Source of the DNA: Guillardia theta CCMP2712
Lineage: Eukaryota; Protista; Cryptophyta
Direction: 5' to 3'
Length of the DNA: 64,000 nt
NCBI RefSeq assembly: GCF_000315625.1
Contig: NW_005434650.1
Span: 400,005 to 464,004 of the forward strand
A program made the position numbers and the translations under genes. Below are positions 5,562 to 57,276 of the stretch, one piece after another (positions within the stretch are counted from its first letter, which is position 1; the number at the start of each line of letters is the position of its first letter). Under the pieces are notes generated by a model. That model was not told the DNA's origin, searched no databases, and saw only the letters and a list, made by a program, of their open reading frames with translations.

Positions 5562-5990
5562 AGGCCGTCGCTTGCGTGGTTGTAGCAACGGTTTTCGCTG
5601 CCTCCTTCGTTTCCTAGTATTTTATTGAGGCGGGTTTGTAGGCTTTATCCTCGTCCTCCTTTGCATCTGAAGCTGTCGATGGAGGTAAGTGGAAGCACAG
5701 GCGCCTGTTATCTCAAGATACCGCAGGATCATTTTTCAAGGATTGACGAGCAATGCACAAAGATTGAGAAACGACTTGCAGAAGACAAGCAAAGTATGTG
5801 CCGCCGCGGATCGATCGAGCGATCGCCGACAAATGTGATGATTTCTAGACGAATGGTGATGATTTGTACAGGTCTAGAGGGGAAAATTGTGGGTCTTGCA
5901 ACAGAAATCGTCGAAAATAATCAGAGTATACCGCAACGACTCGAGTGGTCTTCGAACAGAAATCGTCGAGAATAATCAGAGTATACCGCA
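5562..5990 (+). pseudogene. Internally deleted direct copy of the 10282-11810 region (putative nuclease locus)
   Basis: 5562-5663 matches 10282-10383, then jumps to match 11561-11810 (LKLSMEVSGSTGACYLKIPQDHFSRID...); ~1.18 kb missing. Confidence 0.85.
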
Positions 5991-6057
5991 ACGATAGATC
6001 GAGCGAGATACGAAAGCCCGCGACGCGAAAAGGATGGCTGATCTCGCCATCTCCACA

Positions 6058-7085
6058 TCGATGACCTGCATATCGCTAGCCCCGCACGACCTGCACGCGT
6101 CTCGCAGGACGCGGGCGAGGGTCGTCGTACTCGAGCTTGACGATGCAGTCTCCCTCCTGCACGCCCTTGGCATGAGCCTCGGAGTCAGCCTTGACACGGC
6201 TGACGCGGATGGGGACGGCGAAGGCGTCTCGCTCTCGAAGGCGAGCACAGATGCCCCAGCTCTCTGACTCGAAGTCGACAACCAGCTGCCTTGTCTTGTG
6301 CATGCTGGTCACAGCAAGGAGTCAAGAGCAGAGCAGCAAGGAGACGACACGGGAAGATGACAGCTCAGATATCGCCACAAAGACCTCGCTGAGACCCACA
6401 CGTACAGACAAGCGCTCAAGCGAGGCTAGAGCGCAGGGACGAGCGGAGGAGGAGGAGGATGTGTCAGGCGAGAGCGAAGGGGTGTGGGATGACGAGATGA
6501 GTGCAGAGTCACGCCCACACACGCAGGCAGCGGCCCGGACACATCATCGGACAGGTCAGCCAGCAGCTCGGGCGAGAGCAAGATAGCACATCAAGGTACT
6601 CTCTAACAACTACGTGCGGGCAAGAGCTGGCCGAGGGTGAGCTAGAAGGGCGTCAAGAGTCCAAGGGAGCAAGCCGGCCGTGCCAGCACTCTCGGGTCAG
6701 GGAAGCGCAGGCGAGTAGAGGACGGGAGGACGGGAGCGTGGCAAGGGGGGAGGTGGGTGGGGGCAGGTTTGTGGGTGAGGACAGGAAGGGACTGAGGTTG
6801 ATGATGGAAGGCTGTGGGTTTCGCCGTACCCGTGGGTTTGACGGGAATGGAAGGGAAGGAAGGGGGTGTGGTGGGGTGACCCTTCTTATCTAGTGCACTC
6901 TGTTCGAAAACAAGGCGGAGAGACAGGGGTGGGTGGGGGCAGGTTTGTGGGTGAGGACAGGAAGGGACTGAGGTTGATGATGGAAGGCGGGGAGTGACGA
7001 TGACGGGGAGGAATGGGCGACATAGATCACGCCATGGTGTAGGGCGACCTTGATACGCAATAGAGGAGAGCAAGATGTAGCAATT
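6058..7085 (-). pseudogene. Truncated, frameshifted third copy of the PDZ-TFIIB unit (upstream region + 5' ORF)
   Basis: Reverse complement of ~12159-13275; ~68-bp deletion at 6120, ~19-bp deletion at 6480, replaced segment ~6752-6812; ends within the zinc ribbon. Confidence 0.9.
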
Positions 7086-7183: not shown

Positions 7184-8263
7184 TCATCTTCTCCCTCCCA
7201 CCGTCACCGCTGGCTTGGACTCTCGCTGACAGTCCCTCGCCTTGATCCTCCCCTGCAGATACGACGCCCCGACCCCGCACGCCTCTGCCACCTTCCTCAA
7301 GTCCGCCTTCCCCCCCGCTCTCCCTGCCCACACCTTGTAGATCAGCTCGGCGGCTACAGTAGCGGGAGCGCCCTGGATGTGGCTGCCTGACTGCAGCCTG
7401 ACGGCGTCTGCAGCATAGCTCTGCGGGAGGTCGAGCCTCCCTAGGAAGCGATCGAGCAGCTGGTCGTAGGCCTGCGGCCTCGTGCCCTGGTTCCGCTTCA
7501 TGGCGCATCTCGAGACTTTGTAGAAGGCCGCCCCCGTCGCCTGACAGACCTCCCGCATCGTGCGAGACTGGCCGAGCTCCTTGCAGGCCAGAAACAGAGC
7601 TGCAGACACGTACACAACCAGCCTGCTCTTGTTGCGAGGCATGCGGGCTGCGATCCCCAAGGCCTCCTGCCGGACCTGCTGGGTGACCTCGAGCTTCTCG
7701 CCGAGCTCGCTGATCAGGCCTCTGAGCTCGGCCATGTAGGGGTCTGGGACGTCAGCGGCGCCGAGCTTAGCCCTCTTACTGCAGCCGGCGCGGGCGTCGT
7801 CGCCATCGACGGGTCTCTTGGAGCCAGCAGCTGGGCCGCTGCTGCCCCCGGCGCACGTCGGGCTCTTGGGCCCCTCTACCAAGACGAACTGGTAGGGAGA
7901 CGAGCGATGGACGACGCCGCAATGCGTGCAGACGACGATCGCGTCTCGCTCGATGACCTGCATGTCGCTAGCCCCGCACGACCTGCACGCGTCTCGCAGG
8001 ACGCGGGCGAGGGTGACCCTACAGCTGCCCCCCGCGAGCAGCTTGGGGTGTCTGCCGTCGTGACGGACGTACTCTACGGTGTCGTCGTACTCGAGCTTGA
8101 CGATGCAGTCTCCCTCCTGCACGCCCTTGGCATGAGCCTCGGAGTCAGCCTTGACGCGGCTGACGCGGATGGGGACGGCGAAGGCGTCTCGCTCTCGAAG
8201 GCGAGCACAGATGCCCCAGCTCTCTGACTCGAAGTCGACAACCAGCTGCCTTGTCTTGTGCAT
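7184..8263 (-). CDS. Intronless TFIIB-related factor with N-terminal PDZ-like domain (complete copy)
   Basis: Zn ribbon CRSCGASDMQVIERDAIVVCTHCG; cyclin repeat 1 (SAALFLACKELGQSRTMREVCQATG); repeat 2 (LDRFLGRLDLP..PATVAAELIY..DLRKVAEACGVGASYLQGRIK); N-terminal VSRVKADSEAHAKGVQEGDCIVKL is PDZ-like; first ATG 8263. Confidence 0.85.
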   Translation of the reverse strand: MHKTRQLVVDFESESWGICARLRERDAFAVPIRVSRVKADSEAHAKGVQEGDCIVKLEYDDTVEYVRHDGRHPKLLAGGSCRVTLARVLRDACRSCGASDMQVIERDAIVVCTHCGVVHRSSPYQFVLVEGPKSPTCAGGSSGPAAGSKRPVDGDDARAGCSKRAKLGAADVPDPYMAELRGLISELGEKLEVTQQVRQEALGIAARMPRNKSRLVVYVSAALFLACKELGQSRTMREVCQATGAAFYKVSRCAMKRNQGTRPQAYDQLLDRFLGRLDLPQSYAADAVRLQSGSHIQGAPATVAAELIYKVWAGRAGGKADLRKVAEACGVGASYLQGRIKARDCQRESKPAVTVGGRR

Positions 8264-8876
8264 GCTGGTCACAGCAAGGAGTCAAGAGCAGAGCAGCAAG
8301 GAGACGACACGGGCAGATGACAGCTCAGATATCGCCACAAAGACCTCGCTGAGACCCACACGTACAGACAAGCGCTCAAGCGAGGCTAGAGCGCAGGGAC
8401 GAGCGGAGGAGGAGGAGGATGTGTCAGGCGAGAGCGAAGGGTCAGGTCAGTAGTCTAGGGGTGTGGGATGACGAGATGAGTGCAGAGTCACGCCCACACA
8501 CGCAGGCAGCGGCCCGGACACATCATCGGACAGGTCAGCCAGCAGCTCGGGCGAGAGCAAGATAGCACATCAAGGTACTCTCTAACAACTACGTGCGGGC
8601 AAGAGCTGGCCGAGGGTGAGCTAGAAGGGCGTCAAGAGTCCAAGGGAGCAAGCCGGCCGTGCCAGCACTCTCGGGTCAGGGAAGCGCAGGCGAGTAGAGG
8701 ACGGGAGGACGGGAGCGTGGCAAGGGGGGAAGGGAACGAGCGTTGCCATAGAGAGTCCCCTTCCCTAGGTAATTATAGCCTGCCTTGACTGCGTTTGTGG
8801 GTTTCGCCGTACCCGTGGGTTTGAGCGGAATGGAAGGGAAGGAAGGGGGTGTGGTGGGGTGACCCTTCTTATCTAG
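7243..8876 (-). repeat. Left arm of 1634-bp inverted repeat (partner 12350-13983)
   Basis: Reverse-complement match from tgatcctcccc.. (7243) to ..cttatctag (8876); only a handful of substitutions seen. Confidence 0.95.
8770..8777 (-). promoter_or_regulatory. TATA-like TATAATTA upstream of PDZ-TFIIB (mirrored at 12449-12456 on +)
   Basis: Isolated AT-rich octamer in a GC-rich upstream region, ~500 nt before the ATG; replaced in the broken third copy. Confidence 0.3.
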
Positions 8877-10512: not shown

Positions 10513-11736
10513 CTTTATTCAACTAATACCTTTCTGGTACTGATAAGTTTACTTCTGTTTGTTCAAGTTGCCCCTAATCCTACCAAGTTCCCGGAAAGCG
10601 CCAGGGAAAGCGCAAAACTGACTCAGGTGATGTTGGTGAAGGACGTGTCGAACAACATGAGCGGCCTCGGAGAAGGAGATGAAGGGAGCCTCGGAGAGAA
10701 GGGAGAGGGAGAGAGGAGAGAAGGAGAGGGAGAGGGAGACGGAGAGAGAAAGAGCGGCCTCGGAGAAGGAGAGGAAGGGAGCCTCGGAGAGAAGATGAGA
10801 GAGGGAGAGGGAGAGGGAGATTCTGTGAGACTCGACAGCATACGAGAAGTGTATTCCGACGACGATTTTGAGAACATGGTGTATTCTGGCGCTCCTGCAG
10901 ATCTGCCTGCAGTGAGGAGAGAGATGCTGAAACAGAGCACCATGGCTGCTGACCGAATGAAAGCAAACGGATGGTCCAACACTTTGCCGCTGGAGCACTT
11001 GAATCGCGTCGGGCAGAAGGTAGGCCTGCCACAGGTTTCAATCAAAAATAAGAATCATAATGACATAGCGCCGAACGAGGGTGGGCCCAAGGCTGGGGAT
11101 AGCTTTCAGGCAGATCTATGCGTCAAGTTCGAGCAAGACGTCGCTCTGCACTATTTCTTCAGAGGGTTGATCGAAAATTTTGAAACTGACGTAAAACCTG
11201 TCGCCGCAACTTATCCGAACCATCCGAATTTCAACGATGTTCGCATCAGACAAGGACAATACATGTGTTTCGAGATTACCCTGTCGTTGAAAAAAATTTT
11301 GAGCAAAATTCATCAGCTTGTACGGCTCTACTCTGCTAATGGTCTCAAAGACGACTTTATTGGAAAAAGAGCAGAAATTGCAGTCATTGGTCTTATCGTT
11401 AGCGGGGATAGGAAGAAGTTTGAAGATACAGCCGAGAAGCTCAGATCTTTCTTCCAAAGAGCTAGCGAAGACGAAGTTCTGTCCAAGTACATGATCGATA
11501 AAACGATTCCGATTTTCCTTTGTCGTGTAAATCGCAAGAATCTACACACCCGGGTGATGGATCTGAAACTGTCGATGGAGGTAAGTGGAAGCACAGGCGC
11601 CTGTTATCTCAAGATACCGCAGGATCATTTTTCAAGGATTGACGTGCAATTCACAAAGATTGAGGAACGACTTGCAGAAGACAAGCAAAGTATGTGCGAC
11701 AAATGTGATGATTTCTTGACGAATGGTGATCAGTGA
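10513..11736 (+). CDS. Hypothetical protein, putative PD-(D/E)xK restriction-endonuclease fold + C-terminal coiled coil; hydrophobic N-terminal segment and G/E-rich repeat
   Basis: Frame open from 10513 (FLVLISLLLFVQVAP); FQADLCV..CFEITLSLKKILSKIHQLVRL..IAVIGLIV resembles a D..ExT/K..QL nuclease core; probable 42-nt in-frame intron 11581-11622 (gtaagt..ccgcag). Confidence 0.5.
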   Translation, partial: LYSTNTFLVLISLLLFVQVAPNPTKFPESARESAKLTQVMLVKDVSNNMSGLGEGDEGSLGEKGEGERREGEGEGDGERKSGLGEGEEGSLGEKMREGEGEGDSVRLDSIREVYSDDDFENMVYSGAPADLPAVRREMLKQSTMAADRMKANGWSNTLPLEHLNRVGQKVGLPQVSIKNKNHNDIAPNEGGPKAGDSFQADLCVKFEQDVALHYFFRGLIENFETDVKPVAATYPNHPNFNDVRIRQGQYMCFEITLSLKKILSKIHQLVRLYSANGLKDDFIGKRAEIAVIGLIVSGDRKKFEDTAEKLRSFFQRASEDEVLSKYMIDKTIPIFLCRVNRKNLHTRVMDLKLSMEVSGSTGACYLKIPQDHFSRIDVQFTKIEERLAEDKQSMCDKCDDFLTNGDQ

Positions 11737-12349
11737 TTTGTACAGGTCTAGAGGAGAAACTCGTGGGTCTTCGAACAGAAATCGTCGAGAATAATCAGAG
11801 TATACCGCAAGGAAAGATGGAGCTACGAATGGTGATCAGTGATTTGTACAGGTCTAGAGGAGAAACTCGTGGGTCTTCGAACAGAAATTATCGAGGCGAT
11901 GAAGAGCCAGCGGCAGGCGATCACGACAGAAAGGATTATGTCACCTGAAGCTGCGGTCGGATTCTTTGCCGCCTCGGTGATTGGAAGCTTGCTCTTTTCT
12001 CGTTTTCGTTCCAACTAGCCAGCGATTGGTCTTCCATAGTATTCTTTTCTCTTTTTGTAAACCATATCTGGCGATAGATGTTGTGCCATAGGCAGCTTAT
12101 TTGGTCCATTCGTTACTGGAACTTACTTGGCGGATCGGAGCGAAATACGAATAGTAATAATTGCTACATCTTGCTCTCCTCTATTGCGTATCAAGGTCGC
12201 CCTACACCATGGCGTGATCTAGGTCGCCCATTCCTCCCCGTCATCGTCACTCCCGCCTTCCATCATCAACCTCAGTCCCTTCCTGTCCTCACCCACAAAC
12301 CTGCCCCCACCCACCCCTGTCTCTCCGCCTTGTTTTCGAACAGAGTGCA

Positions 12350-13983
12350 CTAGATAAGAAGGGTCACCCCACCACACCCCCTTCCTTCCCTTCCATTCCC
12401 GTCAAACCCACGGGTACGGCGAAACCCACAAACGCAGTCAAGGCAGGCTATAATTACCTAGGGAAGGGGACACTCTATGGCAACGCTCGTTCCCTTCCCC
12501 CCTTGCCACGCTCCCGTCCTCCCGTCCTCTACTCGCCTGCGCTTCCCTGACCCGAGAGTGCTGGCACGGCCGGCTTGCTCCCTTGGACTCTTGACGCCCT
12601 TCTAGCTCACCCTCGGCCAGCTCTTGCCCGCACGTAGTTGTTAGAGAGTACCTTGATGTGCTATCTTGCTCTCGCCCGAGCTGCTGGCTGACCTGTCCGA
12701 TGATGTGTCCGGGCCGCTGCCTGCGTGTGTGGGCGTGACTCTGCACTCATCTCGTCATCCCGCACCCCTAGACTACTGACCTGACCCTTCGCTCTCGCCT
12801 GACACATCCTCCTCCTCCTCCGCTCGTCCCTGCGCTCTAGCCTCGCTTGAGCGCTTGTCTGTACGTGTGGGTCTCAGCGAGGTCTTTGTGGCGATATCTG
12901 AGCTGTCATCTGCCCGTGTCGTCTCCTTGCTGCTCTGCTCTTGACTCCTTGCTGTGACCAGCATGCACAAGACAAGGCAGCTGGTTGTCGACTTCGAGTC
13001 AGAGAGCTGGGGCATCTGTGCTCGCCTTCGAGAGCGAGACGCCTTCGCCGTCCCCATCCGCGTCAGCCGCGTCAAGGCTGACTCCGAGGCTCATGCCAAG
13101 GGCGTGCAGGAGGGAGACTGCATCGTCAAGCTCGAGTACGACGACACCGTAGAGTACGTCCGTCACGACGGCAGACACCCCAAGCTGCTCGCGGGGGGCA
13201 GCTGTAGGGTCACCCTCGCCCGCGTCCTGCGAGACGCGTGCAGGTCGTGCGGGGCTAGCGACATGCAGGTCATCGAGCGAGACGCGATCGTCGTCTGCAC
13301 GCATTGCGGCATCGTCCATCGCTCGTCTCCCTACCAGTTCGTCTTGGTAGAGGGGCCCAAGAGCCCGACGTGCGCCGGGGGCAGCAGCGGCCCAGCTGCT
13401 GGCTCCAAGAGACCCGTCGATGGCGACGACGCCCGCGCCGGCTGCAGTAAGAGGGCTAAGCTCGGCGCCGCTGACGTCCCAGACCCCTACATGGCCGAGC
13501 TCAGAGGCCTGATCAGCGAGCTCGGCGAGAAGCTCGAGGTCACCCAGCAGGTCCGGCAGGAGGCCTTGGGGATCGCAGCCCGCATGCCTCGCAACAAGAG
13601 CAGGCTGGTTGTGTACGTGTCTGCAGCTCTGTTTCTGGCCTGCAAGGAGCTCGGCCAGTCTCGCACGATGCGGGAGGTCTGTCAGGCGACGGGGGCGGCC
13701 TTCTACAAAGTCTCGAGATGCGCCATGAAGCGGAACCAGGGCACGAGGCCGCAGGCCTACGACCAGCTGCTCGATCGCTTCCTAGGGAGGCTCGACCTCC
13801 CGCAGAGCTATGCTGCAGACGCCGTCAGGCTGCAGTCAGGCAGCCACATCCAGGGCGCTCCCGCTACTGTAGCCGCCGAGCTGATCTACAAGGTGTGGGC
13901 AGGGAGAGCGGGGGGGAAGGCGGACTTGAGGAAGGTGGCAGAGGCGTGCGGGGTCGGGGCGTCGTATCTGCAGGGGAGGATCA
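12350..13983 (+). repeat. Right arm of 1634-bp inverted repeat (partner 7243-8876)
   Basis: Reverse-complement identity with left arm; similarity to the third copy extends to 12159. Confidence 0.95.
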
Positions 13984-14021
13984 GAATTTGCAAGGTTGTG
14001 AAGGAGGGGGTAGGGGCTTAG
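12963..14021 (+). CDS. Second PDZ-TFIIB copy; 3' tail replaced by read-through into flank
   Basis: Protein identical to 7184-8263 except CGVV>CGIV and the tail after YLQGRI (RICKVVKEGVGA vs KARDCQRESKPAVTVGGRR). Confidence 0.8.
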   Translation: MHKTRQLVVDFESESWGICARLRERDAFAVPIRVSRVKADSEAHAKGVQEGDCIVKLEYDDTVEYVRHDGRHPKLLAGGSCRVTLARVLRDACRSCGASDMQVIERDAIVVCTHCGIVHRSSPYQFVLVEGPKSPTCAGGSSGPAAGSKRPVDGDDARAGCSKRAKLGAADVPDPYMAELRGLISELGEKLEVTQQVRQEALGIAARMPRNKSRLVVYVSAALFLACKELGQSRTMREVCQATGAAFYKVSRCAMKRNQGTRPQAYDQLLDRFLGRLDLPQSYAADAVRLQSGSHIQGAPATVAAELIYKVWAGRAGGKADLRKVAEACGVGASYLQGRIRICKVVKEGVGA

Positions 14022-17522: not shown

Positions 17523-17622
17523 NNNNNNNNNNNNNNNNNNNNNNNNNNNNNNNNNNNNNNNNNNNNNNNNNNNNNNNNNNNNNNNNNNNNNNNNNNNNNN
17601 NNNNNNNNNNNNNNNNNNNNNN
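17523..17622. other. Assembly gap (100 N)
   Basis: Run of N. Confidence 1.
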
Positions 17623-43162: not shown

Positions 43163-46100
43163 TTAGTCTATCTGCAACAGGATCCCAACTCCTGCCAGCA
43201 CCCACTTGTAACAGTAGATGCCGTAGAGGGTCACCACAGTAGGCTCGGAGGTCTTGAGCTGAGAGAAGAACACGTAGGAACCGGGCGGGTTGCCTCCGCC
43301 TCGTTGCGAGACGTAGTACACCGGGCAGTCGTAGTACCCCGTCATTCTCCTCTCCTTGGTCGGGATGGCCTTGAGGTGGATGACTGGCATTGGGGGGGCG
43401 AGCTCTCGTAGAATAGAGTCTCGCAGCTCGTCGGCCTGCACAAGGATAAGTCAGGAAAGTCATCTCCCTCGCAGCATGCTCCAGCTCTACCTCACGATCC
43501 CATCTAGCGCCCTCGATGAAGAGGCCATGGATGTAGGCGCCCTCCTCCGGCTGCCCCTCCGGCTGCTCCCACTCCATCTTAGTGATGTCCGTGAACGTTT
43601 CCACGTCATCAAGAGGCCACTGGTGCGCTCTCGCTGTCGTCTGCATGACGGCAGTCACGAACGCCATCGGGTTGAACGTCCCCGACAGCCAGACGGAGGG
43701 AGGCATCTTCAGCGAGTCAGCCCAGTCTGCGAACTGCTTGATCCTATCCAGCACGTCCTGGAACCAGACAGGCAGCGACTTCAAGGTCCTCCATGCATCC
43801 TTCTCCCACGTCTGCAGAGCGAGTCAGAGGTCAAACAAGAGTGTTCACAGGCCTCACCGATGGGATCTGATCCATGAACATCGACGTCATCTGCTTGTCC
43901 ATCATGTCGGAGATGTTCAGGGCTCCCTGCAGCCCCAGCTGCAGGTCGATCAGCGACTTGCGCATGGTGCCGAGTAGGATGTTCATTCGCTCGCATTCCT
44001 GGAGCAGCAGCACAAGGTAAGGGGTGAGATTCTCGGGGGGTCCGATCCTGGTCTTGATGTCGAAGATGTTGAAGTCCTCAGGAAGTCTCCCGAGGAAGTC
44101 TGTCACCTGCTTTGCAATGACATCTTCTTTCGAGGCCCCTCCTCCTCCCCCTCCTCCTCCTCCAAGCTCCATTAACTGCTTGAACAAGTTGAAGCACTCG
44201 TTGTTCAGGTACGAGATGTCCGCGTTGGGGTGCAGCCCGAAGGCGACGGGGGTCTCAGGTGGAAGGTTCCAGTCGATGTGATTCAGGTACTCCTCGTAGT
44301 TGCCCTTCAGCTTGGACTTGAACCCTGGGAAGAGCTCGTGCCCCTCCTGGTAGATCTGAGGGATCACGAGGGTCTCGAGGTAGGTCACGTTGGTACGTCG
44401 GTCCCACTTGTCAGTGATGTGTCCTCCGTACATGATTTCTCCGAAGATGTACTTCAGGTCCGCGTACGGGACCTCTTCGTTCGCTCGTGACCCTGTCCTT
44501 GCATTCAACATATTCACCGCAACCTGAGCACATTGCGCCAGGTCGCCCATGGTGAAACCGTAGATGTTGCTGCAGCTCCAACCGATGAAGCCGAACTTTC
44601 GACGGCCGTTGATGAGGGCATGGAAGCAACAGAGGGCTAGCAGCACAGGCTTGAAGTCCTCCTTCCTGTGACACGTGTCTATAAAGTTCTGGTCGAATGC
44701 CTGCCAGGCCCTTAGCAGGTTTGCGCGGAGGGACTGAGCTGGCTGGTTCGACACCTTGATGGAGTTCTGCAGGATCGCTTCAGGAATGGTCTGCTGCCAG
44801 GGCAGAGGAGGAGGTTCCGACGACAAGAAGCATCGGAAGTCAGGGTGAGTCCCCTCTTGTGAGGCCTCGAGCTTTCTCTCGAGGACCTTGACCCACAAGG
44901 ACATGAGGTGGATGTTCTGAAGGAACACCCATCCTCCCTCCTTCATGCACCTGTCCAGCGCTTGCTCTGCCACTGGCTCCTGGCCCTGACCCATGGAGAT
45001 GTTGATGAACATTCCATTCTCCACGGAGAAGCCCTTCTTCTTCAGCAGAGGGTCAAGATCCGCCACTACGTCCGCTCCTGGAAAGAGGTAAAAGAAGGCT
45101 GCGGTCTGCGGGGCCGTCTCGCGGTAGATTGAGAAAATGTTGAATGCCTCCTCATCAATGAACATCTTCCCGAACCTCTGAATGATGAGAGTCCGCAGGG
45201 AAGCCGTCAGACGATCCGGACGCAGAGCTCGCAATATGCAGAGCTTCTGGAATTCTGCGTAGTTGCCGTACTCCCCAGGAGGTGGCTTCAACTCTGGCTG
45301 CTCCAGCTTCACCCACTCTTCCCACTGCTTGGCACCGGACTCGATGTCCTGTGTGATCTTTTGGAAGGCTGGTATCTCTGCAAGCCCACAGACCGATTGC
45401 CAGGCATTCTCGTTGATGAAAGCAGAGACCTCGGCACTCATTAGAGGTGCGTTCATGTTCTTCGTCCCTTTCAACATGTACTGCACTTCATCCGGATTGA
45501 GCTCGCCCTTGTGCTCATTGGAGACATGAATTTCAGGGTTTCTCTGCAAGATCTTCAAGAAGATGCTGGTAACGAACAAGAGCTTGTGCTCGTCAAATAG
45601 CCCTCTCCTTGTGAAATTGTAAATACCATACGAGATCGAATACGTCAACTCTCTCAATCTGTTGGAGAGGTCGATGTTTTCATTTGTTTGTATCTCCCCA
45701 TTCTCCAATTTTCCTTTCAGCCCAGCTTTGATCATCATTGCAGCAACACGGAACCTCTTGAACCTGAAGTCAAGTGTCAATGACAACCACACCAGGGGAA
45801 GTCTCCAACACTCACGGGTTGTTTCCTTTGGTGCATTGTATCAACTTTTGGACGTGCATGGAATCGCCCACGTACTTCTTGCCTGCCGAGTCGATGGATT
45901 TGAGGAACACAGCAGTAAAGGCTGCAAGGGAGTAGTGATAGAAGCTGTGCACTTTGAACATTTCTCCCAGAGCGAAGAAGAGCAGAGCTCCTCTGTTCGC
46001 CACACCTCTGTAATCCTCACGAGCTTGATTAATGGTAATCTCTGTCTCCTTGGCGATTGCAACCTATCACATGAAGCATCAGCGCTCTTCGTGCAACAAC

Positions 46101-49100
46101 TTCTCATGGCAATTTACCTTCTCGTTGATCTCGATCGAAGTCTTCTTCGCGTCCTCCAGGGACTCGATCAGGGCGACATCTTCAGTGATGTCTCCTTGAG
46201 CTTCGGCCAGCTTTCTCAACAGATCGTCTTCAAGCTGCTTCAGCCTCACGGTGAATTCATTCTGCTGTTTTATCAAGGTCGTTTTCTCTTCTTCAAGATC
46301 TGGCCTTTCTTTGGTAACAACTTTCGCCAGCAGCTGATCCTCCAAACCATCCTAAAGAAACAAGTCAAGCGGGTATTGTAACAGGATCACTGAAGAAAAC
46401 GGCGGTTGACTCACCTCGGTGACCATAAAATTAATCAGAGTGCACTCCGCCTGAACTTCAGGGGGGTAATGCGGGTTGGCAAGTTTGGTATGTAGAATGA
46501 GCTTGAAGTTGTCGTTATATTCGACGTCCTTGTCCCCGAGCTTCACAAAAAAGTTTCTTCCCTTCTTGGTCTTCTGACGTCCAATGACTGGGCCAATCAC
46601 CGCATCGAGCGATTCTTGAAGGTTTTCAATCATCACTGACCAACCAGACTCCAAGGCTCTTTCCATCGTCTCCAGGAGTTTCTTTGTACCCAGCCTGGTG
46701 ACCTGCAAGTTGTTCTTGCTCTCCTTCTCTCGCACCCATACAATCCCTTGCAGCTGGGGGTCGATCATGAGCGGCCAGCGTTCGGCGTAGGTGGTGATTG
46801 CGCCATTTTCAATCGAAACTCGATCGGACGGCAGGCCCTCACTGTTCCAGCGCGCTACTTGAGCAGGGTCTGTAAGGATCGACATGGGATCGGGGTTGCC
46901 GGACAGCGGGACGTTGTTCTGCTTGAGGTAGGGAAGCATAACGTCGTTGATCAGTTTGTTCCTGAACAGCTTGTTGAAGCATCCTACGTACGAGACGAAA
47001 GCAGACGCTATCAAGACATCACCAGGTAGCAGCTCAGCATCAGCCTTCATCTGTTGGACATTGATTGCCCATCGCTCCTGCTCTGAGCCGAGGGCAGCCA
47101 TCAGGCGCTGAGCCAGACCGAGCTTGTTCTGGAGGCGCTCGCCCTCTGCAACCACAGCGTTCTTCTCGGCTACAACCTTGTCATACTCTTGGATCAAGAC
47201 CGCGAGCTTGGCCTCGAGATCAGCCACATGCGCGTTGACCTCAGCCAGCTTCGTGTTTGCTGCCTCCAGCTCGTCTTGTGCTTGTTTCAAAGCTTGACGC
47301 TTCGGTTCGACAGTCACAACAATGTCGTAATAAACGACAATGTTGAGAAGAAACTCGCAAAGACCTGCTGCAGCATTTGACTTTTTCTTCATGATTTCAG
47401 TGTCCTTCACATGCTCGTAAGCCAAATATGGCCTTGCTGCTTCAACAAACTTTGCCTGCATCTGGGAATTGTCGATGACTTGCTTCAATCCTTTCAAGTC
47501 TTCGATAAACTTGTTGACATCCTTCATCATATTCTTTGCTGCGTTCCAATCTCTGTTCTTGGGCCCCTCTCCTCGAATAGCCAAGATTGCAGCAGTGACA
47601 TCGTCTACACCTGGAGGTGGTTTTCCCATACTCTTCAACTCTCCGAGATCCTTTTTGTTGAGGGTATCGAGCGCAGCTTCAGCCTTCTCGACTGCGGGAA
47701 TAGCAGCAGCGAGGTCTCTCTCACAATCTTCTTGCATGATCGATGCGTTGTTTGCAATCACAGCAGTCTTGGCTGCCTCCTCTTGCGCCGCAGCCGCAGC
47801 TTCTTCAACCTTGGCTTTCTCTCCTCCGACTACTTCCGCAACTTCGTCAGCTTTCACCTTAGCTGCTTCTACTTCAACAGACTTCACTTTCACTTGCTCA
47901 ACGAGAATGGCAACATCAGAGGCAGTATGTTCCAATTTGTCGAGACCATTGCTTAAACGCAATATGTTTGCTTCCAAATCTGATCTTTTCTTGGCCAACA
48001 TGTTCTTGTATAGATATATCAGCTCTAGGAATGACTTTGGTGTGGTGTAGTTGTATCGTTTCTCCTGCGCTAGATACTCTTCTGAGGCTTCATTGACTCG
48101 ACCGAAGGAGAATGGCATAAATTTGGTGATGACTTCTTTGGTTTCTGGTTTTCCGAGGTCGTTGTCATGAAGGAATCTCTTGGCGACATCGAACAAGGCA
48201 GTCTCGGGCCATGGCTGGAACCAATCGATGACAGTCGAGTTGATCAGAGAAGGGAAGCGCGAAGCTCGCCTTCTGAAAGCGTCTCCAACAGGAGAGAAGC
48301 AGAGGCACACGTGCAAGTTCTTCTTCACTTTGGCGATGAAGAACTCAAACATAGGATCCTTCGCATCGGGGACACCCTCTCCTTTCCCTTCATTTCGAAT
48401 CGTGTTGTAAATGGTGTCAACCTCGTCGGGTGCGAACAAACCAGGAATCTTTCCAGATGACAACATCTCGTTCAAATACACAAGGAATCTCTCATCAGCA
48501 ATCTGTGAATCCAAGAACATGAAGACTATCTGCTCTCCTTTCAGTCCTGCCTTGAAGTACATCTGCTTGATATCTTCCTTCAAATCACCCATTCCATACG
48601 TCCCAGAGATGGCGATTTGAACCACAGAGCAGTTGCAAATGAACGCAGAAAGCCTGCAAAGAGATTGCTTACCCGACCCTCCAACTCCGACCATCAATCC
48701 ATGTCCGTTCTGAAGGATTCTGCATATTCTGCACACATGCTTCATTGCATCTTCGAACAGAACGAGATTCATGGCGGCATTCGTCTCATTGTAAGAGTTC
48801 AAAGCCATGTTGAGGATGTGGCTGAGTGAATCCATGCTTTCAGCTTTGTTGTAGCTCTTCTCATCAAGATCCTTCCAACAGTGACAGAAGATCAGAGGGG
48901 TTGGGAATACGATGCTTTGATCCAAATCCTTAAAGTATTTCTTGCCGACATCCTTGGCAATCTTTTGAAAGTCGTCCAAATGCTTGGTGGATACAAGCCT
49001 GTCCCCGTAAGTCCTTTCACACTCGTGTATGAACAAAGAAGCGAATTTCGCTTGCTCAGAGAAGTATGCAGGCTCGGACATGAGCATGCCTTTGAAGATC

Positions 49101-52100
49101 GAGGCAAGATGCCTGATCGAGAACTCATAGTGAAAGTTAATGGCAGTCTTGCGAAAGGTGTTGGCGACTTTGTTATGCAATTCAAGTGCTGCCTGGATAA
49201 GTTTATGTGCAAATTGTTCATCATTGAGAGCGTCCCCGAAGTTCTTCAAGTGTCCCTTCAAAAAGGTTGAGAAGATAGTCATCAGGGCTTCTGAGCCGGG
49301 GAACCCTATCGCGAAGATCATGAAATGACGCTGCAGTCGAGGGTTCACCACGAAGGATCCACACGTTGGATTCATAGCACACAAGAATTGAACATTCTGA
49401 ATGACTCTCAGCTGCAGCTTCGCCATATCATACCAGTGCTGGTAATCCATGTACTGACGGAGCAGCGAGATGGGATACTGAGTTTCATATGGATCAAGCT
49501 GGGGCATATTCAAATCATCCACAAAGTAGACCAAGCGCATGCTTCCCGGGGGACCATAGTTTCTTCCAGCCTTCTTCTCGAGCGGGGCTTCAAGCATAGA
49601 CCGGAAGCCACTACCATCAGTGTAGTAGTTGAAGTTCATAGTGAGAGACATGAAGTCTTCGCTGAGGCTTCTCAGTTTGCCGTTGATCATGGCGGTCTTG
49701 CCAGCACCAGCAAGCCCGATCAACAGAGCAGGATATCTGAGCTCAACATGCAGATCGAGGAAGAAGGTTATCGACTGAGTCTCGCCAGTGGGTACAGTCA
49801 CAGAGTCCATCGGTACGCTCGATTCGTACACGATTTGTGGCACTACCTGCGCCCATGGGGTGAACTTACTGGTGGCCTTGTCCACAAAAAAGTCATAGAT
49901 CATCCCCTTTGTTGGCAGTTTCACTCGAGTCCATTTCGATTTCCACCAGTTGCTGAAATTTTTTCGCATGTCTATTCCGTCTGTGATTGTGAAACCAGCC
50001 CCGAAGGCCCATATTGCAGCGAAGACAAAGTATGTTTCAATGACGGTAGCCTCGTTCGCCATGTCTTTGGGAACATTCTCACTGGTCAGCAGACCGTCCA
50101 AGACCCTTGTCAATGACTGAACCATATTAAAATCTAAACAGTTGAAATCGGGAAGCATATGACGAAACTCTTTCTTGATTGCAAAGAGAGTGTCAGGAAC
50201 ATAAGTAGAAAATAGCTCCAACAAGAGGCTTTTCCTTTCAGGAGAGTCGTCTTCTCGTTTCATCACCCATGTTTGTATAAAATTGTACCACTGCTTCGTT
50301 TCTGTGATATATAGAACCCCGGCTCTTGATGATGTTGCTGGAGTAGCATATTTGAGATCCCTCAATTCAAAAATCAATCGCATATGAGGCTTCATGACTA
50401 TTCTTTCATTAGATGCAAGTGTCAACAGCTTGTTGTCATCCATCACAGAATTCATCGATTCGATCCAGTTGGCATCCAAATCTCCATCCAAGATAATCCA
50501 TTTTGGATCAGTTCCGGGAGCGTTGGCAGCTTCTCTCAAGAGCATGGAAAATATTCCATCCTTCCATTCTCGAGTCGTCAAATTAATATATCCATAGAAC
50601 TCGGTCGTTTGGATAGCCTTTGGATCTAAATCTTTGATTGTTGTCTTCAATCCGCGTTTACCATTCGCAGCACCCAATATTTTCCAACAGGTTGATTTTC
50701 CTGTTCCTGAAGTTCCCATGATGAATACGCAATGTCGCACAGCCAACAACTCAGACAGTTGAACAGTCTTCAAAACGGCATTTTCCTCTGGCTGATATCC
50801 AACATCTACAAAGCATTCTTCGATCTTCTTTTCGAGATCCCAATCGCGCTGCCGAGGAACATCTTCTCCTGGGAACAAGTCCCCCAACAATCCCATGAAA
50901 ATGATCAAATCGTCACCAACAATCTTGGGAAGATTGAAGTCTCTCAGAGATCGGAACAACAAAGTGATTTCTGACTTCTCTGGCTCATTACGTTTGAAGT
51001 CGCCGGCCACTCTCAAAACACTCTTGATAGCACGTAGACCCCAATCATAATGCATAGCCTTAGACAAGAGATCCTTGCAAAGGGTGTAAAGATTTATGAA
51101 TTTCACCGCAAGAAGCTTTGCTTGCGTGAACCCCTCTGCCATTAGCATGTTTTCGGCGATCAAAGCAAAATCTGGGACAACAACAGTAACTGGACGAAAC
51201 AAAGCCTTCAGCGACTCTGGTAAAGGTGTCCTTCCAAGATACCCAGGATTCATCGTGATGTAGGCACCACACGTGGGGTCAAGTTTCAGTTCAGCTCCTT
51301 CAAGCACAAAGGTCTTTCTTTGGGCTACGATTGCATCCAGGACACTCTTATATTGTGTAGAACAGACCGATAAAACTTCTGCAATGAGGCGGTTGAATTC
51401 ATCGAAGCAACCCCAGGCACCTGATGCACCAAGACCTTTCCAGATGTCTCCCATTGATTTGTAGTCCATCTCTGGAGCGCAATTGAACACATAAATACAC
51501 TTTGCAAGCATTGCACCCAGATCTTTCGTTGTTTCCGTCTTTCCTGTTCCTGCGGGTCCAGCGGGAGCACATCCCATGCAAAGTTTCAAAGCTTGAGTAG
51601 CAGTGACGTAAATTCTATCAGTCAGTGGCGTAATTACCAGCCTGGCTCCATTCCCGATATATTCATATCCGTACTTGAATTCTGCATCAACGATTAAAAC
51701 GAAACAATCCCCTTCACTTTCTCTCCATTCAAAGCGAAGCTGGGACTGCCATTCAAAATGATTTATATCTGTCACATTGAAGTTGACAAGCTTCAAGATA
51801 ATATCTCTTGAATGTGCGTCTAGCGTAATCAGACACATGGTTTTCATTCGGTCCGCTTTGCTCAAGTCCGTTCGAACCAAATCGATCAACGAAGTAAGGC
51901 CCTCAATTTTGGAATCTGCCATTTCTTTCATTGCATTTGGGTTTGTGGAAAGATTATGGAAAGTTTCTCTCATTTTAGTCGTGAAATCTAAAAGACTCAC
52001 TGTCAAAATGATTTGATTGGGAACAGACTTCAACCATTCTCCAACAGAAGATTTAGTGGCAAATGATTGCAAGCTCTGGAACATAATGTCACGCAAGCTT

Positions 52101-55100: not shown

Positions 55101-57276
55101 CGCCATAGTAAACAATCTTTTTCATCAGCGTGGTAGCTTGCATGCCCTGACTGTATCTTGGCGGTTGACCTTGCACTTTACACTTGACCCATGGATTCTC
55201 GAAATATGACTTCCAAGGAGATCCTCGGATAGGAATGATACTTCCTTGTACAGGATCATCGTAGGCTACTTCTATTTCGACTCCTCCCTGTCCTGGTGGG
55301 ATATAAGAGACGTCGTATGTGCCATCCTTGTTATCAACCAGCTTTGTCTTGAGTTTGATCTCTCCATATCTTACTTTGACCTTCCAATACTCCGCCTCTC
55401 CACCAGATGATCGATTTCGACCAGTGGTGTCCTTGGCTTGTATCTTGAAGACAGCAGGGAAGCCCCACATTCCTCCCTTATCAAAGATGCCAGGACCATA
55501 TGCAATACACTTCTGTGGTTTCGTGTTGACGTAGTATGTCCATTTCACGCGGTTGACAGTGAATCCTTCTCCACCAATTGAAACTCTGACGAAGACTTCT
55601 CCTGGTCCGAATTTGCTCCAGTCTGGCGATAAGCATCGAAGCTGTGTAGGAGATATGAATTCAGTCTTTTCAGAAATTTCTTCATTTCTCCCATCCGTGA
55701 ATTTGATCGTGATCTTTCCCTTGGAGAAATCAAGTCCATGTACGATCACCTCTGTTTTTCCTGTGATAGGACCTTCATCTGGTTCTAAACGTTGAACCGC
55801 GTATGGGGGGCCAACAATTCCGGAAACGTCAAGTGTAAAGAAGTCGTCAAGCCAATCATTGGACCACCCTCCGAACATAAGAATCTTAGCCGTCTTTGGG
55901 TCAAAGGCCCAAGCTGCATCCTCTCTAGCATTCGGACCAACTCCTTGCACCTGTGATTACGTGTATTAGCTGGGTCATGATCTTGTACCCGGTAACTTGA
56001 AATAAAGAGCTTACCACTCCTTGCGAGGACAACCATGTCATTGACTTGCAGTCTAAAACATCAACCTTCGATCGATAAGACCAATCAGTCCCTGAAACAA
56101 CATCATTCAGTCTGATTTTCGACATGTTTTGGGGCTCACGATTTTTTTCATGTGAAGTTTGACCTCCGAAAACGAACAGGTAGTAGCTTGGTACTGATTG
56201 CACTCCTTCAGCAAGATGGCTGCATAAGCGTGTAGGAGCGGTCGGATTTGCGAGGTTTCCTGAAAAGATGTATTTGAGTTTACCTCACAAACAAAGTACA
56301 TGCATACGTATTTGAGTCCAAGTAAACGTTGCCGTGCAGAAAATGTGAGTATCATCAAAGTACTGATTCGAGTCTCTCCCTCCAGTGACAATCAGGAATG
56401 TCTTTTCAATCACATTCGTGGTATGATTGCATCTTGGTGAGGGCAGACTGCCTTCAGTTTTGATGCCACCTGCAGGTGGTTTAGAATCAATCTTGGTTTG
56501 ATACGATGAAAACCTTCTCGTTCTACAGAGATTCCATTCTCCTCTCCTAGCCAAGTCCTTGTCTCGATATCAAAAATGTGCATATCGTTGAAATGCTGTC
56601 TCCTCTCTCCATGACCACCATACCCCCCAAACACCTATCGAAGGATTTAGGAATATATTTTCATGAACAAAGCAAAACTTCACGTATATTCGTTTGTTGC
56701 AAAGGGATGCAGTATGGTACGACCTTGGGCTTGGAGGAATTCCATTCGATGAGACATCAGACCAAATTGGTGTTTCAGGTTCCAGATCAAGTATGAAGCT
56801 ATCATTCAATCTACATTTTTCTCCAATTCCACCGAAAACGAAGAGTTCGGTATCACTTGGTTTGGAAATCATGAGTTCCATTACACAGCGATGGTAAAAG
56901 GTACCTGATGGTGTTACCCGTATGTCTCCATCGTGGTGGAGGGATGCTTCGATCCTCAGGGTCTAACTTCAACCACTTGTACTCATTCGATGACAATTCA
57001 ATGCAATAAGCTTCATTGAGTATCGTTGGCTTATCATCCTGCTCTGTGCAGCCTCCAAAAACGATTGCTCGCCGACCAACGATATTCAGAGAGTGGCCGC
57101 TGATCAGCACATCTCAGTATTCTCTGGTGGGATCGCACTCAACTTACCTCCTCCCTGTGGGTCGTTCGCCTGACTGTTCAGGGGCCTCCCACAGACAGGT
57201 TCCTTGCTCCTGTGGAAGAGATACAGCAGGTCAAGATTAGGTTCAATGCGGAATAGAATGAACTCACGCAAACCAT
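43163..57276 (-). CDS. Axonemal outer-arm dynein heavy chain, alpha (kelch-tail) type
   Basis: Kelch repeats (IVFGG, LFVFGG, PRSYHT), IPT/TIG (LEPDEGPITGKTEVIVHG), filamin-like (VDNKDGTYDVSYIP), AAA P-loops GPAGTGKT, GTSGTGKS, GLAGAGKT, GVGGSGKQS; C-terminus WVLAGVGILLQID*. Confidence 0.97.

What the first reader, a model, noticed from the sequence alone, without database searches (positions are those of the whole stretch)
7184..8263. Intronless PDZ-like + TFIIB fusion factor lacking the B-reader
Seen: an ~85-aa N-terminal segment with a PDZ-like pattern (WGI..IRVSRVKADSEAHAKGVQEGDCIVKL..VTL), then a C4 zinc ribbon, a basic linker (KRPVDGDDARAGCSKRAKL, bipartite-NLS-like) and two cyclin folds ending in an HTH-like segment. 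No EWRxF B-reader follows the ribbon, and the gene has no introns although its neighbours are intron-rich. Established: canonical TFIIB/TFB carry the B-reader and no PDZ; large DNA viruses also encode divergent TFIIBs. Inference: a non-canonical basal factor that could bind TBP/promoter DNA and recruit partners by C-terminal peptide, or antagonise host TFIIB; possibly retro- or virus-derived.
Basis: partly seen in the sequence, partly recalled or inferred. Interest (0 to 1): 0.85.

Follow-up and report, generated by a model that had tools for sequence, protein, structure and literature searches.

The report
Reader-less PDZ–TFIIB paralogue, cryptophyte alga
This is an intact, intronless, duplicated extra copy of the transcription factor TFIIB in the alga Guillardia theta that has lost the part used to open DNA; its PDZ-like front domain is not a one-off, because the ordinary TFIIB of every cryptophyte alga sampled here carries it too, which seems not to have been described.

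Summary
Window 7184-8263 (-) is an uninterrupted 359-aa ORF. It has an N-terminal PDZ-like domain (aa 1-89), a C4 zinc ribbon, a ~50-aa disordered linker in place of the B-reader/B-linker, and two TFIIB cyclin folds.

The window is Guillardia theta scaffold JH992988.1. The PDZ-like domain is not special to this gene. The canonical, B-reader-bearing TFIIBs of Guillardia, Hanusia, Cryptomonas and Hemiselmis (~450 aa) all carry it.

G. theta has its own canonical, multi-exon TFIIB on another scaffold, so this gene is not the sole orthologue. It belongs to a divergent, intronless subfamily with three intact copies:
- copy A, the finding;
- copy B, a 99.7%-identical inverted copy at 12963-14021 (+);
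- paralogue C on another scaffold, whose Hanusia orthologue is transcribed.

A truncated copy lies at 6058-7085. pN is far below pS between A and C (dN/dS about 0.18).

The best reading is a retrogene-like variant TFIIB that keeps the ribbon and core but lacks the DNA-opening elements. A viral origin is not supported for this locus. However, a related PDZ–TFIIB sits beside a very divergent TBP in a giant-virus-like metagenomic contig. Expression of copies A and B was not tested.

The parts
7184..8263 (-). Copy A: intact single-exon CDS, 359 aa plus stop (the finding)
   Evidence: ORF list; annotated as a 359-aa one-exon gene
7997..8263 (-). PDZ-like N-domain (aa 1-89). W16-G17-I18 occupy the carboxylate-loop position. 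G78, G79, C81 and R87 are invariant in the family.
   Evidence: AF2 models; Foldseek top 50 all PDZ; family profile vs PDB all PDZ; alignments
7904..7996 (-). C4 zinc ribbon (aa 90-120; C93, C96, C112, C115)
   Evidence: Aligned with TFIIB/TFB ribbons; 4 of 5 conserved ribbon columns kept
7748..7903 (-). Disordered charged linker in place of the B-reader and B-linker (aa 121-172)
   Evidence: pLDDT < 50 for 122-170; 1 of 7 canonical conserved columns kept; alignment
7484..7747 (-). First cyclin fold of the TFIIB core (aa 173-260)
   Evidence: Pfam TFIIB repeat at 187-249; AF2 helices; Foldseek TFIIB hits; 7 of 11 conserved columns kept
7220..7483 (-). Second cyclin fold (aa 261-348), more diverged
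   Evidence: phmmer to human TFIIB core covers 221-335; AF2 helices; 6 of 15 conserved columns kept
8264..8876 (-). Upstream region of copy A, duplicated together with the CDS
   Evidence: 7243-8876 is 99.7% identical to 13983-12350
12963..14021 (+). Copy B: inverted near-identical intact copy, 352 aa (P0001). It differs from A by one residue and by the last 12-19 residues.
   Evidence: Independent assemblies cover this copy (L002-L004).
12159..12962 (+). Upstream region of copy B, shared with copy A and with the truncated copy
   Evidence: Self-comparison
6058..7085 (-). Truncated third copy: upstream region plus an N-terminal gene fragment with one internal deletion. The zinc ribbon beyond its first pair of cysteines and the whole cyclin core are absent. 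It is annotated as a 95-aa gene (P0004).

Best explanation
The gene is a lineage-specific, retrogene-like paralogue of the cryptophyte 'PDZ–TFIIB'.

Shown:
- The canonical TFIIBs of all four named cryptophyte genera recovered here carry an N-terminal PDZ-like domain joined directly to the zinc ribbon.
- G. theta keeps such a canonical, multi-exon gene elsewhere.
- The gene in the window belongs to a divergent, intronless subfamily (copies A and B here, paralogue C on scaffold JH992978.1, and a transcribed Hanusia phi orthologue of C).
- This subfamily kept the PDZ-like domain, the ribbon and both cyclin folds, but replaced the B-reader/B-linker with a disordered charged linker.
- The subfamily is under purifying selection, and the PDZ-like domain is its most constrained part.

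Inferred mechanism:
- The protein enters the nucleus.
- It can still dock on RNA polymerase II through the ribbon and on TBP and promoter DNA through the core.
- It therefore acts as a variant initiation factor that builds an altered or less active pre-initiation complex at a subset of promoters or under particular conditions.
- The PDZ-like domain, held next to the polymerase dock, recruits a partner peptide as it presumably does in the canonical protein.

Copies A and B arose by a very recent inverted segmental duplication or are kept alike by gene conversion.
For: Identity of the window: 100% match to GCA_000315625.1 scaffold JH992988.1.

Domains.

The N-domain is shared with canonical cryptophyte TFIIBs:
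- Cryptomonas curvata P0035, Hemiselmis andersenii P0036, Hanusia phi P0143 and G. theta P0160.
- An N-domain HMM hits them at E = 1e-19 to 1e-45. It hits no animal, plant, fungal, oomycete or archaeal TFIIB/TFB.

The window protein keeps 1 of 7 reader/linker columns.

The canonical G. theta gene spans 2486 bp for 449 aa, in many short exons. A, B and C are single ORFs.

Tree: (A,B) is sister to (C, Hanusia P0002) with 100% bootstrap, and C pairs with Hanusia at 99%.

Selection, A versus C:
- pN = 0.28 against pS = 0.69, dN/dS about 0.18.
- The N-domain has the lowest pN, 0.18.

The Hanusia orthologue comes from a transcriptome.

A versus B: 5 differences in 1634 nt, of which 1 is in the CDS.
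Against: - No expression data for copies A and B could be obtained. The only other assemblies that carry copy B are genomic, not spliced.
- Copy A's junctions and its distinct C-terminal tail have no support outside the reference assembly.
- dS between A and C is saturated, so the ratio is rough.
- The second cyclin fold has lost 9 of 15 conserved columns. Binding to TBP or DNA may therefore be altered or lost.
- The Pfam TFIIB score of the window protein itself is just under the gathering score.
- Deep branches of the tree are unresolved (18-31% bootstrap). Descent from the cryptophyte canonical gene therefore rests on the shared N-domain, not on the tree.
- Nothing here shows what the PDZ-like domain binds.
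Confidence: 0.6

Rival explanations
1. Competitive regulator. The paralogue occupies TBP and promoter DNA, and/or the polymerase dock and the PDZ ligand. Lacking the reader and linker, it forms dead-end complexes, so it damps transcription driven by the canonical PDZ–TFIIB.
For: Purifying selection shows that some function is kept.
Against: No data on binding or dosage. The diverged second cyclin fold may weaken the very contacts that a competitor needs. Sequence alone cannot separate this reading from the variant-factor reading.
Confidence: 0.2
2. Virus-derived gene. A giant virus of cryptophytes captured the host PDZ–TFIIB and lost the reader. A copy then re-entered the Guillardia/Hanusia lineage, giving the intronless A/B/C genes.
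For: - The copies are intronless while the parent has many exons.
- Reader-less PDZ–TFIIB relatives occur in dense metagenomic contigs rich in genes without known relatives.
- P0111 lies in L016, which is about 85% coding and 40% GC. A very divergent TBP lies 1.2 kb upstream and scores only 85 bits to any solved TBP.
- P0030 lies in L005/L006, among genes that mostly lack known relatives, together with a PDDEXK_3 nuclease, a kinase and giant cysteine-rich proteins.
- The tree puts P0012 and P0030 next to the G. theta clade, but only at 18-23% bootstrap.
Against: - No capsid, polymerase or other viral hallmark gene was seen in L005, L006, L016 or the window.
- The window's flanks are ordinary multi-exon cellular genes.
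- Scans of IMG/VR with P0030, P0111 and the A/C/Hanusia alignment found nothing.
- The best viral structural match (Heterosigma akashiwo virus 01, 2.5e-7) is no better than human TFIIB (2.9e-8).
- The tree support is negligible.
Confidence: 0.1
3. Redundant or decaying duplicate. Copy A, and perhaps the whole A/B pair, is a recent duplicate without a function of its own, kept intact only because it is young.
For: A and B differ at 5 of 1634 positions, and the single CDS difference is non-synonymous. A truncated third copy lies beside them. The duplication boundary replaced the last 12-19 residues in one of the two copies. There is no expression evidence.
Against: The A/B lineage split from paralogue C before or around the Guillardia/Hanusia split, yet it is still an intact ORF with pN well below pS in every domain. 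The upstream 600-800 bp were duplicated with the CDS.
Confidence: 0.07
4. It is the cryptophyte TFIIB-like factor of another polymerase, an Rrn7/TAF1B-like Pol I factor or a Brf-like Pol III factor. In those factors the reader sequence is also not conserved.
For: The relative P0006 has a weak Zn_ribbon_RRN7 match (6.9e-5, below the cut-off).
Against: - The protein ends right after the second cyclin fold. It has no C-terminal extension such as Brf1, Brf2 and Rrn7/TAF1B carry (family architecture from established knowledge).
- Foldseek ranks Pol II TFIIB first, then archaeal TFB, with Brf2 and Brf1 far lower.
- In an exhaustive search, close relatives were found only in Guillardia and Hanusia. 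That is unexpected for an essential universal factor.
Confidence: 0.03

Closest known systems
Canonical cryptophyte TFIIB (G. theta GUITHDRAFT_115183 / L1IS31; Hanusia phi A0A7S0EZ77; Cryptomonas curvata A0A7S0QK00; Hemiselmis andersenii A0A6U4KEN1)
   Same: The same N-terminal PDZ-like domain abuts the zinc ribbon, followed by two TFIIB cyclin repeats.
   Different: The canonical proteins are about 450-470 aa, keep the B-reader and B-linker, and score 92-123 bits on the Pfam TFIIB repeat. The G. theta canonical gene has many introns.
Eukaryotic TFIIB (human/yeast, e.g. PDB 1VOL, 7NVU chain M)
   Same: Ribbon plus two cyclin folds. These are the best structural matches. Hallmark residues shared by all aligned TFIIB/TFB sequences are kept.
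   Different: TFIIB outside the cryptophytes has no PDZ-like domain. It has a reader and linker, which the window protein lacks.
Archaeal TFB paralogues with a degenerate B-reader (for example Pyrococcus furiosus TFB2) and the multiple TFBs of haloarchaea; named from my own knowledge, not tested here
   Same: These are extra copies of the TFIIB/TFB factor in one genome. Some lack the conserved reader yet still support, less efficiently, or modulate initiation.
   Different: They are archaeal, have no PDZ domain, and arose independently. The comparison is functional analogy only.
Plant-specific TFIIB-related protein pBrp; from my own knowledge, not tested here
   Same: A lineage-specific extra TFIIB-family member alongside canonical TFIIB.
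   Different: A different lineage with no PDZ domain. No specific sequence affinity was seen in any search.
TFIIB-like proteins of giant viruses (Nucleocytoviricota)
   Same: Intronless, divergent ribbon-plus-cyclin proteins. Foldseek matches reach 2.5e-7.
   Different: Identity is only 10-20%, and they are no closer than cellular TFIIB. None of the listed viral matches was shown to carry the N-domain. IMG/VR scans were blank.
PDZ domains (PDLIM, DLG, Scribble, HtrA/DegP, site-2 protease PDZs)
   Same: The fold and the sequence profile match. A hydrophobic-Gly-hydrophobic triplet occupies the carboxylate-loop position.
   Different: Similarity is weak: 10-24% identity and a Pfam score below the cut-off for this protein. 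The helix that lines the binding groove is short and of low confidence. No PDZ joined to a basal transcription factor turned up in the paper searches.

Membership tests
TFIIB family (TFIIB/TFB/Brf) | N-terminal C4 zinc ribbon | tested here: met
   C93, C96, C112 and C115 align with the ribbon cysteines of TFIIB/TFB. 4 of 5 conserved columns are kept. The Pfam ribbon model is not hit by this protein itself, but relatives P0005, P0014, P0035 and P0036 hit it above its cut-off.
TFIIB family (TFIIB/TFB/Brf) | Two cyclin-fold repeats (B-core) | tested here: met
   AF2 helices span 175-348 with pLDDT mostly 83-94. The Foldseek top 26 PDB hits are all TFIIB or TFB. phmmer to the human core gives 2.6e-3. 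The Pfam TFIIB repeat scores 23.0 against 23.6 for this protein, and 36.1 and 34.2 for paralogue C and Hanusia.
TFIIB family (TFIIB/TFB/Brf) | B-reader and B-linker between the ribbon and the core | tested here: not met
   1 of 7 conserved columns is kept. Residues 122-170 are disordered. No reader motif follows the ribbon.
TFIIB family (TFIIB/TFB/Brf) | Binds TBP and promoter DNA, and the polymerase dock | not testable with these tools
   No complex prediction or binding assay was available. Only residue conservation was counted.
PDZ domain superfamily | PDZ fold (six strands and two helices) | tested here: met
   AF2 gives strands 3-11, 15-20, 32-37, 53-59 and 81-89 and a helix at 42-45. The second helix (73-77) appears only in the full-length model. 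All 50 best Foldseek PDB hits are PDZ, with TM 0.5-0.64 and E from 4e-3. The model confidence is moderate.
PDZ domain superfamily | Sequence-profile match to PDZ | tested here: met
   With the family profile A5, all 60 listed PDB hits are PDZ domains, best 3.8e-6. Relative P0012 passes the Pfam PDZ_6 cut-off (33.8 against 27). The window protein alone is below the cut-off (15.9 bits).
PDZ domain superfamily | Carboxylate-binding loop (hydrophobic-Gly-hydrophobic) before the second strand | tested here: met
   W16 and G17 are invariant, and I/L/M follows, in all seven aligned N-domains. The triplet sits at the start of strand 2 in the models.
PDZ domain superfamily | Binds a C-terminal or internal peptide | not testable with these tools
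   No ligand is known, and no assay or complex prediction was available.
Cryptophyte PDZ–TFIIB clade (grouping proposed here) | The specific N-domain joined directly to the ribbon | tested here: met
   An N-domain HMM hits the window proteins, the canonical cryptophyte TFIIBs and five metagenomic lineages (E = 1e-17 to 1e-45). It hits none of about 100 TFIIB/TFB sequences from other taxa.
Cryptophyte PDZ–TFIIB clade (grouping proposed here) | Phylogenetic grouping of the core with cryptophyte TFIIBs | tested here: inconclusive
   The NJ tree puts all N-domain bearers together, but the deep nodes have only 18-31% bootstrap.
Giant-virus TFIIB / endogenous viral element | Closest relatives are viral, and viral hallmark genes lie nearby | tested here: not met
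   BFVD matches are no better than cellular ones. IMG/VR scans were blank. The window's flanks are cellular.
Brf1/Brf2/Rrn7-TAF1B | C-terminal extension after the second cyclin fold | tested here: not met
   The protein ends about 11 residues after the last core helix. Brf2 and Brf1 rank well below TFIIB.
Retrogene (processed copy) | Intronless copy of a multi-exon parent | tested here: met
   A, B and C are single ORFs. The canonical gene spans 2486 bp for 449 aa, in many short exons.
Retrogene (processed copy) | Poly(A) remnant and target-site duplication | tested here: not met
   No A-run is visible in the roughly 280 nt downstream of copy A's stop. At saturated dS such marks would be erased anyway, so the absence says little.

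The most novel reading that the evidence does not exclude
The PDZ-like domain on TFIIB is a phylum-wide innovation of cryptophytes. It places a peptide-binding module at the RNA polymerase II dock.

This system has moved between cryptophytes and their viruses, and the G. theta copies are the cellular trace of that traffic.
Probability: 0.15. Interest if true: 0.8.

Novelty: new variant of a known kind. Interest (0 to 1): 0.55.

Why it matters
TFIIB is among the most conserved parts of the eukaryotic and archaeal transcription machinery, and its domain order is treated as fixed. Two departures from that order appear here.

- A whole algal lineage has a peptide-binding PDZ-like module bolted onto the ribbon of its canonical TFIIB.

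It also lets one ask what can be recruited to the polymerase dock.

If the virus-like contigs prove to be viral, it would also be an example of basal transcription factors (TFIIB together with TBP) being exchanged between algae and giant viruses. I found no paper describing the architecture in the searchable library. Databases label the proteins only 'TFIIB' or 'hypothetical'.

Tried and rejected
Searches that added little or nothing:
- A word-indexed search with the fusion-family alignment found only one new member.
- The search for related loci with the eight-member alignment failed for lack of conserved stretches.
- IMG/VR scans with P0030, P0111 and the A/C/Hanusia alignment were all blank.
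- The JGI metagenome scan with the A/C/Hanusia alignment was blank.
- An exact-pattern scan meant to reach the unseen 12 kb of the L016 contig was blank. The viral status of L016 therefore stays open.
- Pfam scans of 18 neighbouring ORFs in L005, L006 and L016 gave almost nothing beyond TBP, PDDEXK_3, a kinase and MIP.
- hhalign of the N-domain profile against the PDZ protein next to the TFIIB gene in L018 was insignificant (probability 8%). There is thus no evidence that this neighbour donated the domain.
- A paper search for the project accession of the other assemblies found nothing.
- No tRNA or Rfam family lies in the window.

Explanations rejected:
- Sole TFIIB orthologue: a canonical gene exists.
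- Endogenous giant-virus island: the flanks are cellular.
- Brf or Rrn7: there is no C-terminal extension.
- Periplastid or nucleomorph targeting: the ORF starts directly with the PDZ-like domain, with no leader. This is inference from the sequence only.

Full report
**Where the window comes from.** Loci recovered through the encoded protein match the window at 100% over 21 kb. They come from Guillardia theta CCMP2712 scaffold JH992988.1, assembly GCA_000315625.1. The window is nuclear DNA of a cryptophyte alga. Its other genes are ordinary cellular ones:
- a SWEET-type transporter and a mitochondrial carrier with introns;
- a dynein heavy chain, an aldo/keto reductase and a MatE fragment.

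There are no tRNA genes and no Rfam matches.

**The observation.** The minus strand carries an uninterrupted ORF from 8263 (ATG; 8272 if the upstream GTG is counted) to 7184. It is 359 aa and is annotated as a single exon.

An AlphaFold2 model built on a 23-sequence alignment has a mean pLDDT of 76. It shows:
- a compact strand-rich domain at residues 1-89;
- a small ribbon around the cysteines C93, C96, C112 and C115;
- a disordered stretch at 122-170;
- ten helices at 175-348 that form two cyclin folds.

The best structural matches of the whole model in the PDB are TFIIB chains of Pol II initiation complexes (7nvu_M, E = 2.9e-8). Archaeal TFB follows, then Brf2 and Brf1 far behind. Sequence evidence for the core is weak but consistent:
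- Pfam TFIIB repeat, E = 8e-5, at 23.0 bits against a gathering score of 23.6;
- phmmer to the human TFIIB core, 2.6e-3.

Its two nearest relatives pass the Pfam cut-off.

It keeps 4 of 5 in the ribbon, 7 of 11 in cyclin fold 1 and 6 of 15 in cyclin fold 2.

**Is the N-terminus a PDZ domain?**
- Alone, the protein gives only Pfam PDZ E = 0.018.
- A profile of the N-domain from seven family members returned PDZ domains as all 60 listed PDB hits. These were site-2 protease, DegP/DegQ/HtrA, PDLIM and harmonin PDZs, best E = 3.8e-6.
- A separate model of residues 1-92 (pLDDT 76.7, pTM 0.66) returned PDZ domains as all 50 best Foldseek hits (TM 0.5-0.64). The E-values were modest, from 4e-3.
- One relative, P0012, passes the Pfam PDZ_6 cut-off.
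It sits where PDZ domains have their carboxylate-binding loop.

I accept the domain as PDZ-like. One reservation remains: the groove-lining helix is short and of low confidence.

The gene is not single.
- A block at 7243-8876 (minus strand) is 99.7% identical to 12350-13983 (plus strand). A second intact copy therefore lies head-to-head at 12963-14021 (copy B, 352 aa, P0001).
- The two blocks differ at 5 of 1634 positions, one of them in the CDS.
- The duplication boundary falls just before the stop codons, so the last 12-19 residues differ.
- A truncated third copy lies directly downstream of copy A at 6058-7085. It consists of the upstream region plus an N-terminal gene fragment with one internal deletion, and it is annotated as a 95-aa gene.
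- A fourth, intact and more distant member is on scaffold JH992978.1 (GUITHDRAFT_135112). Its database model of 234 aa starts at the ribbon, but the uninterrupted ORF is 337 aa and includes the full N-domain (L007 9692-10705). I call it paralogue C.

An exhaustive HMMER search of 1.84 billion representative proteins found only 21 hits.
- Close relatives exist only in Guillardia and in Hanusia phi (P0002, 55% identity, from a transcriptome).
- Four weak hits (P0005, P0006, P0012, P0014) share the N-domain as well as the core.

Searching on from P0014 brought back a set of proteins of about 450-470 aa that cover it end to end:
- Cryptomonas curvata A0A7S0QK00;
- Hemiselmis andersenii A0A6U4KEN1;
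- Hanusia phi A0A7S0EZ77;
- Guillardia theta GUITHDRAFT_115183 (L1IS31).

All are named 'Transcription initiation factor IIB'. They have strong TFIIB repeats (92-123 bits), a reader motif and a linker. An HMM of the N-domain hits all of them at E = 1e-19 to 1e-45. It hits none of the roughly 100 animal, plant, fungal, oomycete and archaeal TFIIB/TFB sequences in the same set.

In the four named cryptophyte genera recovered here, the canonical TFIIB therefore itself carries the PDZ-like domain. The fusion is older than the gene in the finding.

**Relation between the copies.**
- A neighbour-joining tree with 100 bootstraps puts (A,B) as sister to (paralogue C, Hanusia P0002) at 100%, and C with Hanusia at 99%.
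- The canonical cryptophyte proteins form their own clade at 90%.
- Deeper nodes are unresolved at 18-31%.

The divergent subfamily therefore already had two branches around the Guillardia/Hanusia split.

Between A and C, pN is 0.28 against pS 0.69 (dN/dS about 0.18, with dS saturated). The N-domain is the most constrained part, with pN 0.18.

The canonical G. theta gene spans 2486 bp for 449 aa in many short exons, whereas A, B and C are single ORFs. That pattern is what a processed (retro) copy would give. No poly(A) trace is visible downstream of copy A, and none would be expected to survive at this divergence.

Copy A has GC3 of 0.82, against 0.57 in C and 0.45-0.72 in neighbouring exons. 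GC-biased gene conversion between the inverted copies is a possible cause. I did not test this.

**Viral origin.** At this locus the evidence is negative:
- the flanks are cellular;
- three scans of IMG/VR and one of JGI metagenomes were blank;
- viral TFIIBs in BFVD match no better (best 2.5e-7, Heterosigma akashiwo virus 01) than human TFIIB.

Two metagenomic relatives nevertheless sit in unusual contexts.
- P0111 (402 aa, reader-less) lies in L016. That stretch is about 85% coding, 40% GC and almost entirely made of genes without known relatives. A TBP gene lies 1.2 kb upstream and scores only 85 bits against every solved eukaryotic TBP, barely above its score to archaeal TBPs.
- P0030 (337 aa, reader-less) lies in L005/L006. 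These are dense 55-64% GC contigs with a PDDEXK_3 nuclease, a kinase and proteins of 1700-2000 aa rich in cysteine repeats.

Both contexts look like giant-virus DNA, but no hallmark gene was seen. I could not reach the rest of either contig.

Another relative, the P0038 cluster, lies in marine contigs with ordinary eukaryotic neighbours. One database entry labels it as an Asgard archaeal MAG protein, which I take for a binning error.

**How it most likely works.**

Shown: the protein keeps the PDZ-like domain, the ribbon and a recognisable though diverged TFIIB core. It is under purifying selection, and it coexists with a canonical factor.

From established knowledge of TFIIB:
- the ribbon binds the polymerase dock;
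- the core binds TBP and flanking DNA;

Inference: the paralogue can still bridge promoter-bound TBP and Pol II but builds an altered complex. It would act either as a variant initiation factor for some promoters or conditions (my preferred reading), or as a competitor of the canonical factor.

Only three residues separate the last PDZ strand from the first ribbon cysteine. The PDZ-like domain would therefore sit at the polymerase dock and could hold a partner peptide there. What that partner is remains unknown. The basic stretch in the linker may serve as a nuclear localisation signal, which is also inference.

**Comparison with what is known, and novelty.**
- Membership in the PDZ superfamily is met by fold and profile.
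- Brf/Rrn7 and giant-virus TFIIB memberships are not met.
- The nearest functional analogies are archaeal TFB paralogues with degenerate readers and plant pBrp. I name these from my own knowledge only.

Five full-text searches found no description of a PDZ–TFIIB. A search for the project accession of the other assemblies also found nothing. One 2026 preprint notes in passing an expanded 'TFIIB/D-type' orthogroup in G. theta (10.64898/2026.02.23.705090).

I rate the finding a new variant of a known kind. The gene itself is a lineage-restricted paralogue. The more interesting result is the lineage-wide PDZ–TFIIB architecture behind it.

**Limits.**
- There is no expression evidence for A or B.
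- Copy A's junctions are seen only in the reference assembly.
- The tree is distance-based, with weak deep support.
- The models are of moderate confidence.
- The taxa behind P0005, P0012, P0014, P0030 and P0111 are unknown.

I declare one slip.

Noticed in passing
window 10627-11736 (+) (annotated 412-aa gene, about 10630-12018): A gene of unknown function lies between the two inverted TFIIB copies. Its product has a Glu/Gly-rich repetitive N-terminus and no Pfam match. Degenerate pieces of it (84-92% identity) recur at 5562-6004, so it took part in the same round of segmental duplication.
   Followed up: partly
L007 9692-10705 (+) (G. theta scaffold JH992978.1): The database model of GUITHDRAFT_135112 (234 aa) starts at the zinc ribbon. 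The uninterrupted ORF is 337 aa and includes the complete PDZ-like domain, so the public model looks truncated at its 5' end.
   Followed up: yes
L020 3001-5486 (G. theta scaffold JH993046.1): The annotated canonical TFIIB (GUITHDRAFT_115183) lacks about 22 residues in the middle of the PDZ-like domain compared with its relatives. A short exon was probably missed in the gene model.
   Followed up: partly
L016 8046-8753 and 10001-11209: A very divergent TBP gene and a reader-less PDZ–TFIIB gene lie 1.2 kb apart in a metagenomic contig. The contig is dense, 40% GC and rich in genes without known relatives. It looks like giant-virus DNA, but no hallmark gene was seen in the 15.8 kb available.
   Followed up: partly
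L018 8283-9464 (-) and 10001-11239 (+); the same pair in L019: In a marine eukaryotic contig the PDZ–TFIIB gene has a 393-aa PDZ-domain protein as its divergently oriented neighbour. A profile comparison with the TFIIB N-domain was not significant.
   Followed up: yes
cluster of P0038 (member P0145, NCBI MGB1591701.1): A protein 51% identical to a cryptophyte-type PDZ–TFIIB is deposited as 'TFIIB-type zinc ribbon-containing protein [Promethearchaeia archaeon]'. It is probably a eukaryotic contig binned into an Asgard archaeal MAG.
   Followed up: no
window 43831-55950 (-): A dynein heavy chain is encoded in very long exons (ORFs of 653, 1981 and 1202 aa). The upstream-most ORF joins TIG, filamin and Kelch repeats to the dynein N-terminal region 2. 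That is an unusual N-terminal architecture for a dynein heavy chain.
   Followed up: no
window 7184-8263 and 12963-14021: The third-position GC content of the two inverted copies is 0.82. It is 0.57 in paralogue C and 0.45-0.72 in neighbouring exons. GC-biased gene conversion between the copies is a possible cause.
   Followed up: no
window 17523-17622: A run of 100 N marks an assembly gap in the scaffold.
   Followed up: no
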